Source: Haliotis rufescens (Eukaryota). Taken from it: a stretch of 64,000 nucleotides of DNA. This document shows positions 835 to 54,955 of this stretch, one piece after another (the first letter of the stretch is position 1; each line of letters starts with the position of its first letter). The position numbers were made by a program, and so were the translations under genes. A model generated the notes under the pieces. It was not told where the DNA came from, did not search any database, and was given only the letters and a program-made list of their open reading frames with translations. The stretch is taken from the NCBI RefSeq assembly GCF_023055435.1, contig NW_025964372.1:53940001-54004000 (forward strand), given 5' to 3'.

Positions 835-4338
<3,504 letters not shown>

Positions 4339-5205
4339 TTACTCGTAAATACATTCAATGTAGAACTAATGAAACGTGGAACCCACATATAACTTATCTC
4401 ATACAACTTTGGAAACAACTGAGTTGTTTAAGAAATGTAATTGCGAGGCATGATTAGATGCAATAATCATAAAGCTTTCAGTCGAACCCACCACACAAGG
4501 ATGTTTTTGTTCCTCCCAAATTTAGTTCCGACCAGGAAAAAGTATCAAGATTAAATACATAAAACTGCAGTGACAAGTTCCCGTTGGCAGGAACAAGTGC
4601 TTGGGTGTGTTAATGAGCGATGTTCCCGTGTATTGTTAATGTCCAACATGGAAAACAGGGAAACTAATACATGCAAATCCAACACGAATAAACATTATCT
4701 AAAAGAAAAACAAAAGAATATGATGAAAAAAGAAAGTATGAAACAAACCCCGATAGTTAATTAATGATAAATACAAATGTGAAAACATGTAATTATGACA
4801 CAAACGGATAGAATTCAGAGCCCCAAACGCCACCGAAATCTGAAGTACTGCTGCACGAGAATTCCAAGAAATTATACAAAAAAGGCAGTCGCCAGGGAAT
4901 ACCACGGTAGTAGGGTTGAAGTATCCTGAAGACTTAACAGAAAAGGAAAAAGCAAATAAAATCTGCTAACAGAGACATGTATAATGTATAAACAAAACAT
5001 TTTTCTAATGAATTTGGTTTGGGTTTTTTAAAATGTCAATAGGAATTTTCACACATAAAGTATTTGGAAAAACTATATTGCAAGTATGTGTTCCAAATAT
5101 ATATATATATACAAAAATGAGGTAAATGTTCACTCGGTGTACATATGATATATAATAAAATAATAAAGTCCACGTTAGTCCATCATCTTCTTTATATCAG
5201 TTTCA

Positions 5206-5246
5206 TACAAAGTACTTTCGCTGTCTCATGACAGCTCTTCAGTGTT
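5206..5246 (-). ncRNA. Minimal type I hammerhead ribozyme motif (sense to BarH pre-mRNA)
   Basis: Minus strand reads AACA-CTGAAGA-GCTGTC(ATGA)GACAGC-GAAA-GTAC-TT^TGTA. Stem I is 3 bp, NUH=CUU. Confidence 0.7.
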
Positions 5247-5272
5247 ACTGACATTGACATATCACTGTCAGT

Positions 5273-5313
5273 TACACTGAAGAGCTGTCATGAGACAGCG
5301 AAAGTACTATGTA
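5273..5313 (+). ncRNA. Minimal type I hammerhead ribozyme motif
   Basis: TACA-CTGAAGA-GCTGTC(ATGA)GACAGC-GAAA-GTAC-TA^TGTA: stem I TACA/TGTA, core CUGANGA, 6-bp stem II closed by G-C, GAAA, palindromic mini-stem III (AGTACT), NUH=CUA. Confidence 0.8.
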
Positions 5314-5390
5314 TGAAACTGATATAAAGAAGATGATGGACTAACGTGGACTTTATTATTTTATTATATATATATATGCAAGTATGTGTT

Positions 5391-5392
<2 letters not shown>

Positions 5393-5437
<45 letters not shown>

Positions 5438-5735
5438 ATATGTGTATGGATCTATGTGCATGGATATGTGTGTATATGTATTTATTTGTATGCTTGTGTG
5501 TATATTTATATTATTTGTATGTATTCATGTGTGTGTGTGTATGTATGTATGTGTCTATATATATATATAATTTTATGTATTTATATGTGTATTTAGATGT
5601 ATGTATATTATATATCATTTGCATGTATTAATGTGTATGTATATGTGTGTGTATTTATGAATATGTACAAAAACTACTCCGAGTCATCCTATTACTGCTG
5701 TTACTATGTCAAGACGTGTGTGTGTGTGTGTGTCT
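5393..5735. repeat. (TA)n microsatellite and degenerate TA/TG low-complexity tract
   Basis: Pure (TA)n ~5393-5434, then mixed tatg/tgtg and (GT)n ~5716-5732. Confidence 0.9.
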
Positions 5736-5772
5736 GTATTTACGTGTATTACTTAAATACCTTTTAGAAACG

Positions 5773-6978
5773 GACAGACAGACAGTTTATTAAGTGAGAA
5801 GGCCATATGCCCATAATACAGACACAATGGTTGATTGCCTGAACTACGCATGCCAAAATGGAAATTTAATAGTGTATATATTGCAACTGTGTTGTTTTAT
5901 AGATATTTAGGTATTGTGTTCACGCCCAAACTTGTTTGGACTAAGGCACTAAATACTCCTGCTGCACAGAGTAACAAGGCCATTATGACATTATATAGAT
6001 ATCAAAAGAAAGTTGGTAATATACCCTGTCAAGATTTATTTAAGATATTTGATGCTATGATTGTGCCTATTGTCTGTTACGGTGCAGAAGTATGGGGCAT
6101 CTCATATTGTAAAATTATTGAAGACGTACAGAATAAAATGTGTAAATGGTTTCTAAATACAGGTAAAACAACAAACAATGCAATGGTTTTAGGAGAGTGC
6201 GGAAGAGCCCCTCTCCAACTTGTGTATACCGCAGGGCCATCAAGTATTGGTGCAGGCTACTGCGTTTGGACGAGCACAGACTGCCTCGCCAATGCTATTT
6301 AATGCTCAAATCACTGGACCATTCTGGTCGCACCACATGGGCTACTCACATTAAGAACATCTTGTTTAAATTAGATTTTGGATATGTATGGTTAACACAA
6401 GCTGTTGGCAATGTGATGATATTTATTCATCTTTTTAAGCAAAGATTATCTGATAACCTTCAACAATCATGGTGTAGTTCTATCAATAGTATATCTGATA
6501 CCTTTTATTATTAACATTTTAAATCCATGTTAAATGTGGAAAAATATCTTACACTCCCCATACCAATACATCTGAGAATATGTATGACTCGTTTCAGATG
6601 TAGCAAGTTTAAACTTGCAATTGACTTGGGGAGATACACAAATGTCCCATACACTGAACGATTATGTAAATATTGCATAGAAAATGGTATATCTTTTATT
6701 GACGATGAATTTCATGTTTTACTTGAGCGTTATTCAGCCCTAAGAAATATGTATCTTAAACAGTATATCACGTTTCAAACTGTAACATCTTTTACTGAAA
6801 TTATTTCATCAGAAAACTTTGATGTTGTATATAACACATGTTTATATCTATATAAAGTCCAATGGCGAAGAGAAACTTAAATCGATTACTTCCTTGGCAT
6901 GCGTAGTTCATGCAATCAACCATTGTCTGTATTATGGGCCTATGGCCTTCTTACTGAATAAACTGTCTGTCTGTCTGT
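5773..6978 (+). mobile_element. 5'-truncated RTEX-like non-LTR retrotransposon relic with inverted copy of its own 3' end at the 5' side
   Basis: Frameshifted ORFs 5857-6880 with YRYLG, PIVCYGAEVWG, MVLGECGR, TRFRCSKFKLAIDLGRY..ERLCKYC..DDEFHVLL (LINE RT C-terminus). Tail aataaa(ctgt)n. 5773-5856 is the reverse complement of 6894-6978. Flanks cttttagaaacg / cttttaaaaacg. Confidence 0.85.
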
Positions 6979-8530: not shown

Positions 8531-8796
8531 CACATTCCTTGCAGTAGCTAATATATGTTTCAGGTTTTGAAATCTTAATATGATACATAAAATATAGTAA
8601 ATCGAAGCAGTTGCTGAAATATTTGTTTGAGAGTGTTTCAAGACATACATTTGTTTCTGACAAATGAGGACACATTATTCTTTCCAGTATTTTCGGAAAA
8701 GATTATTTTTTATAAAAATCCAAAAAGAAAGATATCTCAATTACAGCTAGAGGTTCTACTTCGCGTATGCAATGCCGACTTCCGCACACGTTCTTC

Positions 8797-11700
8797 CCTG
8801 CTGTCGTGTTGTGTTTACTGGACACTACTGTCGTGTTGTGTTTACTGGACACTACTGTCGTGTTGTGTTTACTGGACCCTACTGTCGTGTTGTGTTTACT
8901 GGACACTTCTGTCGTGTTGTGTTTACTGGACACTACTGTCGTGTTGTGTTTACTGGACACTACTGTCGTGTTGTGTTTACTGGACACTACTGTCGTGTTG
9001 TGTTTACTGGACACTACTGTCGTGTTGTGTTTACTGGACCCTACTGTCGTGTTGTGTTTACTGGACCCTACTGTCGTGTTGTGTTTACTGGACACTACTG
9101 TCGTGTTGTGTTTACTGGACACTACTGTCGTGTTGTGTTTACTGGACACTACTGTCGTGTTGTGTTTACTGGACATTACTGTCGTGTTGTGTTTACTGGA
9201 CACTACTGTCGTGTTGTGTTTACTGGACACTACTGTCGTGTTGTGTTTACTGGACACTACTGTCGTGTTGTGTTTACTGGACACTACTGTCGTGTTGTGT
9301 TTACTGGACACTACTGTCGTCTAGTGTTTACTGGACCCTACTGTCGTCTAGTGTTTACTGGACACTACTGTCGTGTTGTGTTTACTGGACACTACTGTCG
9401 TGTTGTGTTTACTGGACACTACTGTCGTGTTGTGTTTACTGGACACTTCTGTCGTGTTGTGTTTACTGGACACTACTGTCGTGTTGTGTTTACTGGACAC
9501 TTCTGTCGTGTTGTGTTTACTGGACACTACTGTCGTCTAGTGTTTACTGGACACTACTGTCGTCTAGTGTTTACTGGACACTACTGTCGTGTTGTGTTTA
9601 CTGGACCCTACTGTCGTGTTGTGTTTACTGGACACTACTGTCGTGTTGTGTTTACTGGACACTACTGTCGTGTTGTGTTTACTGGACACTTCTGTCGTGT
9701 TGTGTTTACTGGACACTACTGTCGTGTTGTGTTTACTGGACACTTCTGTCGTGTTGTGTTTACTGGACACTACTGTCGTCTAGTGTTTACTGGACACTAC
9801 TGTCGTCTAGTGTTTACTGGACACTACTGTCGTGTTGTGTTTACTGGACCCTACTGTCGTGTTGTGTTTACTGGACACTACTGTCGTGTTGTGTTTACTG
9901 GACACTACTGTCGTGTTGTGTTTACTGGACACTACTGTCGTCTAGTGTTTACTGGACCCTACTGTCGTGTTGTGTTTACTGGACACTACTGTCGTGTTGT
10001 GTTTACTGGACACTACTGTCGTGTTGTGTTTACTGGACACTACTGTCGTGTTGTGTTTACTGGACACTACTGTCGTGTTGTGTTTACTGGACACTACTGT
10101 CGTGTTGTGATTACTGGACACTACTGTCGTCTAGTGTTTACTGGACACTACTGTCGTGTTGTGTTTACTGGACACTACTGTCGTGTTGTGTTTACTGGAC
10201 ACTACTGTCGTGTTGTGTTTACTGGACACTACTGTCGTGTTGTGTTTACTGGACACTACTGTCGTGTTGTGTTTACTGGACACTACTGTCGTGTTGTGAT
10301 TACTGGACACTACTGTCGTCTAGTGTTTACTGGACACTACTGTCGTGTTGTGTTTACTGGACCCTACTGTCGTCTAGTGTTTACTGGACACTACTGTCGT
10401 GTTGTGTTTACTGGACACTACTGTCGTGTTGTGTTTACTGGACACTACTGTCGTCTAGTGTTTACTGGACACTACTGTCGTCTAGTGTTTACTGGACCCT
10501 ACTGTCGTGTTGTGTTTACTGGACCCTACTGTCGTGTTGTGTTTACTGGACACTACTGTCGTGTTGTGTTTACTGGACACTACTGTCGTGTTGTGTTTAC
10601 TGGACACTACTGTCGTGTTGTGTTTACTGGGCACTACTGTCGTGTTGTGTTTACTGGACACTACTGTCGTGTTGTGTTTACTGGACCCTACTGTCGTGTT
10701 GTGTTTACTGGACACTACTGTCGTCTAGTGTTTACTGGACACTACTGTCGTGTTGTGTTTACTGGACACTACTGTCGTGTTGTGTTTACTGGACACTACT
10801 GTCGTGTTGTGTTTACTGGACACTACTGTCGTGTTGTGTTTACTGGGCACTACTGTCGTGTTGTGTTTACTGGACACTACTGTCGTGTTGTGTTTACTGG
10901 ACCCTACTGTCGTGTTGTGTTTACTGGACACTACTGTCGTCTAGTGTTTACTGGACACTACTGTCGTGTTGTGTTTACTGGACACTACTGTCGTGTTGTG
11001 TTTACTGGACACTACTGTCGTCTAGTGTTTACTGGACACTACTGTCGTGTTGTGTTTACTGGACACTACTGTCGTGTTGTGTTTACTGGACACTACTGTC
11101 GTCTAGTGTTTACTGGACACTACTGTCGTGTTGTGTTTACTGGACCCTACTGTCGTGTTGTGTTTACTGGACACTACTGTCGTGTTGTGTTTACTGGACA
11201 CTACTGTCGTCTAGTGTTTACTGGACACTACTGTCGTCTAGTGTTTACTGGACACTACTGTCGTGTTGTGTTTACTGGACACTACTGTCGTCTAGTGTTT
11301 ACTGGACACTACTGTCGTCTAGTGTTTACTGGACACTACTGTCGTGTTGTGTTTACTGGACACTTCTGTCGTCTAGTGGTTACTGGACACTACTGTCGTG
11401 TTGTGTTTACTGGACCCTACTGTCGTGTTGTGTTTACTGGACACTACTGTCGTCTAGTGTTTACTGGACACTTCTGTCGTCTAGTGTTTACTGGACACTA
11501 CTGTCGTCTAGTGTTTACTGGACCCTACTGTCGTGTTGTGTTTACTGGACACTTCTGTCGTGTTGTGTTTACTGGACACTACTGTCGTGTTGTGTTTACT
11601 GGACACTACTGTCGTGTTGTGTTTACTGGACACTACTGTCGTGTTGTGTTTACTGGACACTTCTGTCGTGTTGTGTTTACTGGACACTACTGTCGTCTAG

Positions 11701-12788
11701 TGGTTACTGGACCCTACTGTCGTGTTGTGTTTACTGGACACTTCTGTCGTGTTGTGTTTACTGGACACTACTGTCGTCTAGTGGTTACTGGACACTACTG
11801 TCGTGTTGTGTTTACTGGACCCTACTGTCGTGTTGTGTTTACTGGACACTACTGTCGTGTTGTGTTTACTGGACACTACTGTCGTGTTGTGTTTACTGGG
11901 CCCTACTGTCGTGTTGTGTTTACTGGACACTACTGTCGTGTTGTGTTTACTGGACACTACTGTCGTCTAGTGTTTACTGGACCCTACTGTCGTGTTGTGT
12001 TTACTGGACACTACTGTCGTGTTGTGTTTACTGGACACTACTGTCGTGTTGTGTTTACTGGACACTACTGTCGTGTTGTGTTTACTGGACACTACTGTCG
12101 TGTTGTGTTTACTGGACACTACTGTCGTGTTGTGTTTACTGGACACTACTGTCGTCTAGTGTTTACTGGACACTACTGTCGTGTTGTGTTTACTGGACAC
12201 TACTGTCGTGTTGTGTTTACTGGACACTACTGTCGTCTAGTGTTTACTGGACACTACTGTCGTGTTGTGTTTACTGGACCCTACTGTCGTGTTGTGTTTA
12301 CTGGACACTACTGTCGTGTTGTGTTTACTGGACACTACTGTCGTGTTGTGTTTACTGGACACTACTGTCGTGTTGTGTTTACTGGACACTACTGTCGTCT
12401 AGTGTTTACTGGACACTACTGTCGTGTTGTGTTTACTGGACCCTACTGTCGTCTAGTGTTTACTGGACACTACTGTCGTGTTGTGTTTACTGGACACTAC
12501 TGTCGTGTTGTGTTTACTGGACACTACTGTCGTGTTGTGTTTACTGGACACTACTGTCGTGTTGTGTTTACTGGACACTACTGTCGTGTTGTGTTTACTG
12601 GACACTACTGTCGTGTTGTGTTTACTGGACACTACTGTCGTCTAGTGGTTACTGGACCCTACTGTCGTGTTGTGTTTACTGGACACTACTGTCGTGTTGT
12701 GTTTACTGGACACTACTGTCGTGTTGTGTTTACTGGACACTACTGTCGTGTTGTGATTACTGGACACTACTGTCGTCTAGTGGTTACT
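8797..12788. repeat. 27-bp minisatellite, ~148 copies
   Basis: Unit ctactgtcgtgttgtgtttactggaca with few recurring variants (ctag, ccct, cttc). Confidence 0.98.
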
Positions 12789-13944
12789 AAACTCTTTTGT
12801 CGCTTTGCGCTAATGCTAATATTAGCAATTGTACAAGTGGCTATGAAGGCAGTAAACGCATAAGAACTTGTCTGTTTATAGTCTCATTATTGTACGGCCC
12901 CTAATTGGTGTGGTTGTAACGCCAAGCAGATCCACCAGTCACACCTGAAGACGACACCTGTCCAGTAATTAACACACCTGTGAGAGACCGTGTCCAGGTA
13001 AAGGATCCCTGTGTTGTCATCGAGGCACACAACGCAGCACAACGGGGGGAGGGGGGACGTCTTTCACCACAAAGAGATTCACGGATTATCGGGTTTGGGC
13101 GATTAGCTGCACACCGTGTGGCGAGTCGATCTGCAGTGACTTCTTTCAACTGTTCTCGTACTTCTACTCAACTTATCTGATTTCATCGTTGTAGATGGCG
13201 TGGATAGCGAGTCAAAGGCGGGAGGGTAGTTAAAGACAGCATTTAACGCGCTGACAAAACGTTTTACACAGATCCTATTACATGTTTAGGAGGTAATAGA
13301 CATTTAAATTTAGAAAGATAACAGGTTTCGAGTTCTATCCTATTTTCATGCACGTTAGCGACCGGTGGAGAGTGGAGAGTTTGGAGCCGTGCTGTCTTGT
13401 CTTCCAGATAACACTTAACTAAACTCATTGTGCTGGCTGTAGTCGACTATATCTACCCGCATCTCTCGTGTCGTCAGCAATTAGAGGACTTGAGAACAAA
13501 GACTCACACACTGTCTTCACTTACAGCCCGCCAGGACTTCACACGGACAATAAGGAAGACTTAGTGAAAATTGTTGACATTTCTGAGGAAAGTGAGTCAA
13601 CGCAAGTGATATGGTATGTCATGGTCAAAACCTTATCAGACATATCAATAGTATTATTTGGAACAATCAGTAAGAATTAGCGATACTTATAAGGAAAACG
13701 CGAGGTCATTTGTCCGACATCCTTGTTGATGAGCCCCGTCCGACCCGCCCATGTAGACCACGACCAGCACGGGATTCCGTCATTGTCAGAACTAAATCAT
13801 GCATGTGCACACGTCACTGGCCTTCTCCCGTCAACAGGGGATATCCTTCCGCATGCAAATTAAACACCCTTATTGATCGACTTACGACATATGACGTATG
13901 GAGAATTTGTATACTGTGGAAATTGCATCACAAGTTATGAAAAG

Positions 13945-18936: not shown

Positions 18937-19279
18937 AATCACTAAGTTTGTCGTCGTTCTCGTCGTCCCCCGGTTGTGTGACGAAGTAGTCTGGGTGTGG
19001 TAGTTCTGCCGGGGGGTCGGGCCGGTGCCGGTAGAGAGGGTTCACGGAGGGGAACACTGGGTCGGACCTGTGCGGGCCTCTGTCCGACAGAATGTCTGAT
19101 ATAAGAAATGAGGGTTTGCTGTGGGGTGGCGAATATTTGACACCACCCCTCGGTGACTCTCTGTCCTCAGAGTTATCTGCCCCTGAAGTTGTTGAAGGAC
19201 TTTCGCATTTATCATTTCCAACAACGTCGCCCTCACTGTCGCTGTGGTTGAAGGCGACACTTGACTTGGAGTCGGACAT
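18937..19279 (-). CDS. BarH: BarH-like homeobox gene, coding exon 1 (N-terminus with eh1/FIL Groucho-interaction motif)
   Basis: ATG at 19279 with an in-frame TAA five codons upstream. Encodes Ser/acidic-rich MSDSKSS...KPSFLISDILSDR (eh1/FIL motif FxIxxIL). Ends GAT T|GTAAGT (consensus donor 18936-18931, phase 1). T plus exon-2 CA gives TCA, keeping frame with the homeodomain exon. Confidence 0.9.
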
Positions 19280-54799: not shown

Positions 54800-54955
54800 T
54801 GAGTATAGTTTTACGCCGCTTTTAGCAATATTCCAGCAATATCACGGCGGGAGACACCAGAAATGGGCTTCACACATTGTACCCATGTCGGGAATCGAAC
54901 CCGGGTCTTCGGCGTGACGAGCGAACGCTTTAACCACTAGGCTACCCGACCGCCC
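54800..54955 (-). mobile_element. Intact tRNA-derived SINE with 17-bp TSD
   Basis: GGGCGGTCGGGTAGCCTAGTGGTTAAAGCG..GGGTTCGATTCCC (A and B boxes). TSD TGAAACGGACTATAGAA at 54783-54799 and 54956-54972. Confidence 0.93.

What the first reader, a model, noticed from the sequence alone, without database searches (positions are those of the whole stretch)
5079..5393. Palindromic twin-hammerhead element inside the BarH intron
Seen: a 224-bp almost loop-less palindrome (centre 5259/5260, ~4 mismatches). Each arm encodes a full hammerhead core (CUGAAGA, 6-bp stem II, GAAA, palindromic AGUACU mini-stem III, UH, stem I), so either strand's transcript contains one ribozyme plus its antisense. It is bracketed by a 17-bp direct repeat and (TA)n. 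Established: minimal type I hammerheads with palindromic stem III typify Penelope-like element pseudo-LTRs and retrozymes, and tend to cleave as dimers. Inference: a non-autonomous fold-back ribozyme element. In BarH pre-mRNA it would either form a ~110-bp dsRNA (ADAR/Dicer substrate) that masks the ribozyme or, on refolding, cleave the intron. On both strands the antisense arm is transcribed before the ribozyme, favouring self-inhibition. The arm mismatches include the cleavage nucleotide (CUA vs CUU) and stem I.
Basis: partly seen in the sequence, partly recalled or inferred. Interest (0 to 1): 0.85.

Follow-up and report, generated by a model that had tools for sequence, protein, structure and literature searches.

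The report
Back-to-back Penelope retroelement stubs with hammerheads
The 224-bp palindrome is real, but it is an ordinary by-product of a young Penelope-like retrotransposon: two very short, back-to-back copies of the element's 3' end, each carrying its small hammerhead ribozyme motif, dropped into a (TA)n tract in a BarH intron.

Summary
Arms 5148-5257 and 5262-5371 are 97% complementary. Each carries a complete minimal type-I hammerhead motif, and a 17-bp direct repeat plus (TA)n brackets the whole.

It is not a separate fold-back element. The arm is the last ~110 nt of an abundant, ~99% uniform repeat. Full-length copies of that repeat encode reverse transcriptase plus a C-terminal GIY-YIG endonuclease between 269-nt pseudo-LTRs, which makes it a Penelope-like element (PLE).

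Genome-wide, the exact hammerhead core occurs 361 times. In 100 sampled cores, 19 pairs are inverted with 3' ends outward, against 2 in the opposite orientation. The inner junctions vary. Every insertion sits in (TA)n. In 14 of 15 pairs exactly one end carries a 36-nt "tail". All of these are published PLE signatures.

The window copy is therefore most likely a doubly 5'-truncated insertion primed on both strands, with a readable target-site duplication.

In BarH pre-mRNA it should fold into a ~110-bp hairpin (-181 kcal/mol) that masks the weakened sense ribozyme, so no function is expected. Cleavage, expression and read support could not be tested. The scan has noted similar inserts elsewhere in this genome.

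The parts
5074..5111 (.). Left copy of the target-site duplication: short TA run, the unique 17-mer TGCAAGTATGTGTTCCA (5079-5095), then a 16-nt TA run.
   Evidence: Direct repeat family D5; shared 17-mer in both flanks.
5112..5147 (-). 36-nt PLE 'tail', present on this side only. It has 2 substitutions against the family consensus.
   Evidence: The same 36 nt follow one end of 14 of 15 inverted pairs, and in a full-length copy they follow the 5' pseudo-LTR arm. The tail is described in PMC8557442 and PMC11167929.
5148..5262 (-). Left arm: the last ~113 nt of the PLE (end of the pseudo-LTR) in minus orientation. Hammerhead motif at 5254-5192, core CUGAAGA 5242-5236, U17 at 5210, helix I weakened by U2.4 to A. 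This is the copy in sense within BarH pre-mRNA.
   Evidence: (93.4 bits against the family model).
5259..5262 (.). Head-to-head junction of the two truncated copies, at a self-complementary ATAT that is also present in the element consensus upstream of the hammerhead.
   Evidence: Window sequence compared with the consensus 3' UTR of full-length copies.
5262..5371 (+). Right arm: the last ~110 nt of the PLE in plus orientation, tail-less. Its hammerhead motif at 5265-5327 (A17 at 5309) matches the family consensus except at 5265, the first position, which lies near the palindrome centre and outside the helices.
   Evidence: 96.9 bits.
5372..5434 (.). Right copy of the target-site duplication (TA run, the 17-mer at 5377-5393) and the remaining (TA)n microsatellite target.
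4075..4317 (-). Host context: Bar-class homeobox exon (…[12 protein letters not shown]…TWYQNRR then a splice donor), about 830 nt downstream of the insert in gene orientation.
   Evidence: An eh1-motif ORF taken as exon 1 lies near 19108 on the minus strand, which places the insert in a ~14.7-kb intron.

Best explanation
The palindrome is a dead-on-arrival insertion of a young Penelope-like retroelement (PLE: reverse transcriptase plus C-terminal GIY-YIG endonuclease, with a CX4CX2C linker of the kind described for Neptune and Nematis PLEs). Its pseudo-LTR ends in a minimal type-I hammerhead.

Inferred mechanism:
1. The element's endonuclease nicked both DNA strands in two TA tracts about 20-38 bp apart, either side of a unique 17-bp island.
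2. Each exposed 3'-OH primed reverse transcription of element RNA. One started at the UAUAUAU just upstream of the 36-nt tail (the tail-less right end). The other started at the UAUAUA just downstream of it (the tailed left end).
3. Both cDNAs stopped about 110 nt in, just past the hammerhead, and were joined head to head at an ATAT.
4. Repair of the staggered cut duplicated the target.

Shown: family membership, orientation, tail, target and duplication. Inferred: the order of events and priming on both strands.

Today the insert most likely does nothing selected. In BarH pre-mRNA the antisense of the right arm is transcribed first and pairs with the left arm into a ~110-bp hairpin. That hairpin hides a single, helix-I-weakened hammerhead which would in any case need a partner copy to form helix III. 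The intron is then spliced out and degraded.
For: - The arm is a repeat: 644 first-look candidates, 40 scored, 38 of them at 99-100% identity and the rest at 96-98%. The exact 32-nt hammerhead core occurs 361 times with up to 2 mismatches, against 0 for the reversed control.
- Full-length copies carry a 765-789-aa open frame with RVT_1 and GIY-YIG domains between 269-nt direct repeats that end in the arm.
- Among the first 100 cores listed there are 19 (-)(+) pairs within 5 kb, against 2 (+)(-) and 2 (+)(+). Close spacings are 44, 49, 49, 50, 55, 85, 89 and 90; the window's is 66.
- Arm lengths in 14 resolved pairs are mostly unequal.
- All ends abut (TA)n, and 14 of 15 pairs carry exactly one 36-nt tail.
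- Published PLE traits match. Inverted 5'-truncated copies, a 30-40-bp tail at one end and a microsatellite target: PMC8557442. Both strands cleaved and extended in vitro, with the tail lying between two RT start sites: PMC11167929. Minimal hammerheads in pseudo-LTRs, including pairs 100-700 bp apart on opposite strands: PMC4209133.
- Folding: the right-arm monomer's minimum-energy structure is the hammerhead fold (-16.3 kcal/mol). The homodimer's is the double hammerhead with a 6-bp intermolecular helix III (-39.4). The whole insert folds as a hairpin at -181 kcal/mol.
- A second, sequence-related hammerhead family in the 3' regions of related PLE copies keeps the fold through changes on both sides: 3 helix I pairs, 5 helix II pairs and the centre of helix III.
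Against: - No Rfam hammerhead model matches.
- Within the family there is too little variation for covariation, and the between-family support rests on only two lineages found with a descriptor that itself demands pairing.
- No cleavage, RNA or read data could be obtained.
- The near-equal arm lengths here (about 113 and 110), in L004 (248/243) and in L018 (676/660) could instead reflect snap-back copying of one cDNA.
- The window copy differs from the consensus at about 6 of 256 positions, so it is not among the youngest copies.
Confidence: 0.88

Rival explanations
1. Same element and same target, but the palindrome arose by snap-back. One target-primed cDNA (tail plus arm) folded back at the ATAT and was copied on itself, and the second end was resolved by TATATAT/(TA)n microhomology. 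Under this reading there were not two independently primed cDNAs.
For: The arms are almost equal in length here, in L004 (248/243) and in L018 (676/660). The centre is a self-complementary ATAT.
Against: Most pairs are clearly asymmetric (209/517, 213/176, 1030/215, 2464/869, 2981/387, 1081/2943). A snap-back copy should also carry the tail on both sides, yet 14 of 15 pairs have exactly one. The purified PLE protein extends both strands in vitro (PMC11167929). Inner ends cluster about 97-124 nt from the 3' end in many short pairs, so equal lengths can arise from a shared stop zone.
Confidence: 0.15
2. A distinct non-autonomous fold-back ribozyme element: a palindromic unit that is itself transcribed and mobilised as a family.
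For: Short twin-hammerhead palindromes recur in the genome: at least 8 close pairs among 100 sampled cores. Non-autonomous PLE derivatives are known (PMC8557442; bioRxiv 10.64898/2026.07.22.740005).
Against: Core-to-core spacings differ between copies (44 to 90, then 181 up to 3281). The junctions I could read (window, L014, L022, L023) are all different. The arms contain nothing beyond the autonomous element's 3' end. A palindromic RNA would be a poor template and would hide its own 3' recognition region.
Confidence: 0.04
3. An exapted intronic regulator of BarH: a ribozyme that cuts the pre-mRNA, or a hairpin that feeds ADAR or Dicer.
For: A very stable ~110-bp hairpin is predicted. The insert lies in the sense-transcribed intron about 830 nt upstream of the homeobox exon.
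Against: The sequence is 97-99% identical to hundreds of dispersed copies, so it is recent and unselected. The hammerhead that is in sense for BarH has a broken helix I pair, and its minimum-energy fold is not the hammerhead. Published PLE hammerheads cleave poorly even as dimers (PMC4209133). A purified PLE showed no dependence of integration on its hammerhead, and no RNA ends were found at the cleavage site (PMC11167929).
Confidence: 0.05
4. An assembly artefact: a chimeric fold-back long read built into the contig.
For: Read support could not be checked. PLE inverted structures are known to trouble assemblies (PMC8557442).
Against: The insert has a clean target-site duplication, a tail on one side only, and three arm mismatches. 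The same architecture recurs at many loci and is the published norm for PLEs.
Confidence: 0.03

Closest known systems
Minimal type-I hammerheads of Penelope-like element pseudo-LTRs (Cervera & de la Pena 2014, PMC4209133; dimer cleavage by Lunse et al. 2017, as cited in PMC6765202)
   Same: CUGANGA and GAAA boxes, the G10.1-C11.1 pair, a long (6-bp) helix II, a palindromic 15.2-16.2 stretch that can only form a real helix III between two copies, a position at the end of the pseudo-LTR, hundreds of genomic copies mostly on truncated elements, and pairs close together on opposite strands.
   Different: There is no extra nucleotide between A9 and G10.1. Helix I is long (4 bp, a 4-nt bulge, then 7 bp) rather than 4-5 bp. 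The family is almost invariant, like the D. virilis case, rather than highly variable. No activity data.
Canonical PLE insertion architecture: pseudo-LTRs, an adjacent inverted 5'-truncated copy, a 30-40-bp tail at one end, a microsatellite or AT-rich target (Craig et al. 2021, PMC8557442; Frangieh et al. 2024, PMC11167929)
   Same: All four features are present in this family. The window copy is the extreme case in which both copies are cut down to ~110 nt.
   Different: Here both alternative start points flanking the tail are UAUAUA tracts that match the (TA)n target. [quoted passage not shown] Clade assignment (Neptune- or Nematis-like, from the CX4CX2C linker) was not tested by phylogeny.
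L1 twin priming
   Same: A second priming event on the other DNA strand during target-primed reverse transcription produces an inverted segment inside one target-site duplication.
   Different: L1 twin priming uses internal priming on one RNA, so only one outward end is the element's 3' end. Here both outward ends are 3' ends, which fits an enzyme that cuts and extends both strands.
Animal non-LTR retrozymes (Cervera & de la Pena 2020, PMC7229834; Li et al. 2026 preprint 10.64898/2026.07.22.740005)
   Same: Type-I hammerheads; proposed derivation from PLE pseudo-LTRs; abundant in bivalves.
   Different: Retrozymes are head-to-tail tandem units of about 170-400 nt that give circular RNAs. This insert is head-to-head, has one unit per strand, and would fold on itself.
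MITEs and fold-back DNA transposons
   Same: Long inverted arms, a short or absent loop, flanking direct repeats.
   Different: The arms are the 3' end of a retroelement. The inner ends vary from copy to copy. A one-sided 36-nt extension is present. The duplication is long and of variable length rather than fixed.

Membership tests
Hammerhead ribozyme, type I (minimal/PLE form) | Conserved core C3-U4-G5-A6-N7-G8-A9 and G12-A13-A14, an A15.1-U16.1 pair, and H17 at the cleavage site | tested here: met
   Both arms read CUGAAGA … GAA-A-GUAC-U-(A or U). H17 is A at 5309 and U at 5210.
Hammerhead ribozyme, type I (minimal/PLE form) | Helix II closed by G10.1-C11.1, and helix I pairing the sequence 5' of C3 with the sequence 3' of H17 | tested here: met
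   Helix II is 6 bp (GCUGUC/GACAGC). Helix I is 4 bp plus 7 bp across a UGAA bulge in the right arm, whose minimum-energy fold is the hammerhead. In the left arm the proximal helix I drops to 3 bp and the minimum-energy fold is a different structure.
Hammerhead ribozyme, type I (minimal/PLE form) | Helix III: a short palindromic 15.2-16.2 stretch that forms a full helix only between two copies | tested here: met
   AGUACU is self-complementary. The RNAcofold homodimer minimum-energy structure is the domain-swapped double hammerhead at -39.4 kcal/mol, against 2 x -16.3 for two monomers.
Hammerhead ribozyme, type I (minimal/PLE form) | Match to curated covariance models (Rfam hammerhead families) | tested here: not met
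   No hammerhead hit at gathering score, at E<=10 on 5000-5500, or on one arm alone. PMC4209133 reports that earlier descriptors missed these minimal forms.
Hammerhead ribozyme, type I (minimal/PLE form) | Compensatory base changes that keep the helices among relatives | tested here: inconclusive
   Within the family there is almost no variation. Against a second related family, both sides changed in 3 helix I pairs, 5 helix II pairs and the centre of helix III, with the CAGUUA/AAACUG flanks conserved. This rests on only two lineages, found with a pairing-based filter.
Hammerhead ribozyme, type I (minimal/PLE form) | Site-specific self-cleavage | not testable with these tools
   Needs transcription of a single arm, a tandem dimer and the full palindrome.
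Penelope-like element (endonuclease-positive, C-terminal GIY-YIG) | A single ORF with a PLE-type reverse transcriptase followed by a GIY-YIG endonuclease | tested here: met
   This holds for full-length family members, not for the window copy. RVT_1 and GIY-YIG are found in 717-765-aa ORFs. Five copies have a 785-789-aa open frame without stops. The sequence shows a CX4CX2C linker and cysteines within the GIY-YIG core region. 1993 homologues reach E<=1e-10, and the named ones come from bivalves.
Penelope-like element (endonuclease-positive, C-terminal GIY-YIG) | Pseudo-LTRs (partial tandem) that carry the hammerhead | tested here: met
   In L031 a 269-nt direct repeat flanks the ORF, and each repeat ends in the 110-nt arm.
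Penelope-like element (endonuclease-positive, C-terminal GIY-YIG) | Frequent inverted 5'-truncated copy; a 30-40-bp tail at only one end; an AT-rich or microsatellite target with a variable duplication | tested here: met
   19 (-)(+) pairs against 2 (+)(-) pairs. The 36-nt tail is on exactly one end in 14 of 15 pairs. All ends abut (TA)n. The window's duplication has a 17-bp unique part plus TA runs.
Non-LTR retrozyme | Head-to-tail tandem units of about 170-400 nt, each with a hammerhead, expressed as circular RNA | tested here: not met
   The two units are head to head. There are no tandem units in the window: the family model finds only these two hits in 64 kb. RNA was not testable.
MITE / fold-back DNA transposon | Fixed terminal inverted repeats, a fixed-length duplication, and uniform copies derived from a DNA transposon | tested here: not met
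   The inner boundaries and arm lengths differ from copy to copy, and the arms equal a retroelement's 3' end.

The most novel reading that the evidence does not exclude
In this family the two alternative reverse-transcription start points, either side of the 36-nt tail, are both UAUAUA tracts complementary to the (TA)n target, and nearly every two-ended insertion uses one of each. The short palindromes would then be natural records of an ordered, two-strand, microhomology-guided priming reaction by a dimeric PLE enzyme. Their inner ends, clustered about 97-124 nt from the 3' end, would mark a shared stop: either the 5' end of pseudo-LTR-initiated RNA or a block just past the hammerhead. That would give a genomic read-out for a step of PLE integration that is still unresolved.
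Probability: 0.25. Interest if true: 0.45.

Novelty: new member of a known kind. Interest (0 to 1): 0.2.

Why it matters
Mainly as annotation. Palindromic 'twin hammerheads' in this genome should be read as truncated Penelope-like insertions, not as a new ribozyme element or a regulator of BarH.

The window copy is a clean teaching example. Most PLE insertions in microsatellites hide their target-site duplication, but here a unique 17-bp island between two TA tracts makes it readable. The one-tail-per-insertion rule is also seen clearly in this family.

A ~110-bp perfect hairpin in a developmental gene's intron is a plausible editing or small-RNA substrate. There is no evidence that this matters.

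Tried and rejected
- Rfam scans of the whole window, the 501-nt region and a single arm gave no hammerhead. The only hits were spurious miRNA-hairpin matches to the palindrome.
- A covariance model built from family 1 (R1) finds family-1 copies only. The second hammerhead family scored 12.4 bits (E about 0.5) even with filters off, though it was aligned in the expected structure. Pair counts on the family-1 alignment show no useful covariation. A MAFFT alignment of the two families was misaligned.
I did not resend it, so read laying was not used and there is no read or RNA evidence.
Copy statistics after that rest on listed coordinates only.
- Target-site duplications could not be read in most other copies because both flanks are (TA)n.
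- Rejected readings: DNA-transposon MITE, retrozyme, replicating fold-back family, assembly artefact, BarH regulator (see the rival explanations).

Full report
**Observation.** The repeat finder reports inverted arms at 5148-5257 and 5262-5371: 110 nt, 97% complementary, 4 nt apart. It also reports a direct repeat family with copies at 5079-5118 and 5377-5416, whose unique part is the 17-mer TGCAAGTATGTGTTCCA. As RNA the insert folds into a single hairpin of -181 kcal/mol, z = -29.6 against shuffles.

Each arm reads, 5' to 3' on its own strand: CAGUUACA, CUGAAGA, GCUGUC-AUGA-GACAGC, GAA, AGUACU, H, then UGUA-UGAA-ACUG. This has every conserved hammerhead position, a 6-bp helix II closed by G10.1-C11.1, a self-complementary AGUACU in place of helix III, and a helix I of 4 + 7 bp across a 4-nt bulge. 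The arm differences are A17 versus U17, one helix I position, and one position near the centre.

**What it belongs to.** The arm is not unique. The window's own genome (1.33 Gb) gave 644 first-look candidates for the 110-nt arm. Of the 40 scored, 38 were 99-100% identical and the rest 96-98%. The exact 32-nt hammerhead core occurs 361 times with up to 2 mismatches, against 0 for the reversed control.

Long copies carry a 765-789-aa open frame with reverse-transcriptase and GIY-YIG domains. A CX4CX2C linker sits ahead of the GIY-YIG motif. In locus L031 this ORF lies between two 269-nt direct repeats, each ending in the arm. This is a Penelope-like element (PLE) with pseudo-LTRs.

Its protein has about 2,000 homologues at E<=1e-10, at up to 54% identity. 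The named ones come from bivalves, or from bivalve-associated 'symbiont' records. This suggests, weakly, that the host is a mollusc.

**Architecture of the family.** Three regularities emerge.
- Inverted pairs always have their 3' ends outward. Among the first 100 cores listed there are 19 (-)(+) pairs within 5 kb, against 2 (+)(-) and 2 (+)(+).
- Arm lengths vary and are mostly unequal, for example 209/517, 213/176, 1030/215, 2464/869, 2981/387 and 1081/2943. One arm (L023, 63 nt) lacks the hammerhead altogether. Close-pair spacings of 44-90 nt show many short palindromes with different centres.
- Every outer end abuts (TA)n, and ends come in two forms. One stops at …TTATTATATAT. The other continues for 36 more nt (TACATGTACACC…CATTTTTG) before the TA tract. 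In 14 of 15 pairs exactly one end has this extension. L014 is the exception, and L022 was left out because one outer end is truncated. In the full-length copy the 36 nt follow the 5' pseudo-LTR arm and lead into the body.

**Match to the literature.** These are published PLE traits.
- Craig et al. 2021 (PMC8557442) describe partial tandems forming pseudo-LTRs, an adjacent inverted 5'-truncated copy, a 30-40-bp tail often present at only one end, and microsatellite targets that obscure the duplication.
- Frangieh et al. 2024 (PMC11167929) showed that a purified PLE protein cleaves and extends both DNA strands, and that the tail is the stretch between two adjacent reverse-transcription start sites.
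- Cervera and de la Pena 2014 (PMC4209133) found minimal hammerheads in PLE pseudo-LTRs, mostly on truncated copies, including pairs 100-700 bp apart on opposite strands. These act as dimers, and poorly at that.

**The window copy.** The parts, in order:
- 5074-5111: left copy of the target duplication
- 5112-5147: tail, in minus orientation
- 5148-5262: about 113 nt of the element's 3' end, minus orientation
- 5259-5262: junction at an ATAT
- 5262-5371: about 110 nt of the 3' end, plus orientation, tail-less
- 5372 onward: right copy of the duplication, then the rest of the (TA)n tract

The duplication is readable here because the two nicks fell in TA runs either side of a unique 17-bp island.

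I infer nicking of both strands, priming on both, early termination just past the hammerhead, and head-to-head joining. Snap-back copying of a single cDNA is a minority alternative for this near-symmetric copy.

The copy differs from the consensus at about 6 of 256 positions, so it is somewhat older than the bulk of the family.

**Is the hammerhead genuine?** Rfam models do not detect it, and the family is too uniform for covariation. Three lines of evidence support it.
- The complete core is present.
- The right arm's minimum-energy fold is the hammerhead, and its homodimer's minimum-energy fold is the classical double hammerhead.
- A second abundant family lies in the 3' regions of related PLE copies: CAGUUAUGGC, CUGAUGA, GACUCG…CGAGUU, GAA, AGCGCU, A, GCC…ACUG. 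The loose pattern that picks it up gave 314 hits against 12 in the control; this family made up most of the listed hits. It keeps all three helices through changes on both sides, while the flanks stay alike.

I accept it as a PLE-type minimal hammerhead motif. Its activity is untested.

**Host context and consequence.** A Bar-class homeobox exon lies on the minus strand at 4075-4317. An eh1-motif (FLISDIL) ORF that I take as exon 1 lies near 19108 on the same strand. The insert therefore sits in a ~14.7-kb intron, about 830 nt upstream of the homeobox exon.

BarH pre-mRNA would contain first the antisense of the right arm and then the left-arm hammerhead. That hammerhead has a broken helix I pair and a non-hammerhead minimum-energy fold. 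The hairpin should dominate. A role in BarH regulation is unsupported.

**Limits.**
There is therefore no read support for the fold-back and no expression, editing or cleavage evidence.
- After I sent no typed letters of the homeobox exon to any search tool. The whole window was, however, passed by reference to the local family-model search.

**Earlier notes in the scan.** This genome has 74 notes that mention hammerheads. They include palindromic double-hammerhead inserts at other loci, and a follow-up that tied a hammerhead minisatellite to an abundant Penelope-type element. This kind of insert has therefore been seen before on other DNA of the same genome.

**Verdict.** It is a new member of a well-described kind: a truncated, inverted PLE insertion. 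Interest is low.

Noticed in passing
window 8627-12863: A ~4.2-kb minisatellite with a roughly 27-bp period (it reads as endless …LLSCCVYWT… in one frame) inside the same BarH intron.
   Followed up: no
window 5393-5760: A long compound (TA)n/(TG)n/(TATG)n microsatellite directly right of the insert. It is the kind of tract this PLE family targets.
   Followed up: partly
window 5835-6880 (+): ORF fragments that look like the C-terminal part of a non-LTR (LINE) reverse transcriptase. An earlier scan note (s1-805739) describes this as a LINE insertion with two outward-facing 3' ends in one duplication, which would be the same two-ended geometry as the PLE insert next to it.
   Followed up: no
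window 54880-54951 (-): A tRNA-like hit just above Rfam's gathering score (30.1 bits against 29). It could be a tRNA gene or a tRNA-derived SINE head.
   Followed up: no
L031:2407-3321 and 3318-5615: In a full-length PLE copy a 304-aa ORF overlaps the start of the RT-EN frame by 4 nt, in another frame. This could be a frameshift, a retained intron or a separate ORF1. It has no Pfam match.
   Followed up: partly
L032 flanks (G000:C334, around 38190700 and 38194900): The unique sequences just outside the two (TA)n flanks of this PLE pair are reverse complements of each other (GCATCGATCCACGCAAT / ATTGCGTGGATCGATGC). The inversion may therefore extend into host DNA, or the target may itself have been a palindrome.
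   Followed up: no
L018, L025, L033, L036 flanks: Several insertions share similar flanking sequence beyond the TA tract (…ACAGCA(A/T)A…, …GTTCGTTATAA…). This suggests the PLE often lands in the (TA)n tract of another repeat family.
   Followed up: no
L037:1-330 region (3' UTR of the PLE; ref 1-93): The pseudo-LTR holds an internal ~93-nt inverted segment rich in TGACGTCA (CRE-like palindromes) upstream of the hammerhead. It may be a promoter element.
   Followed up: no
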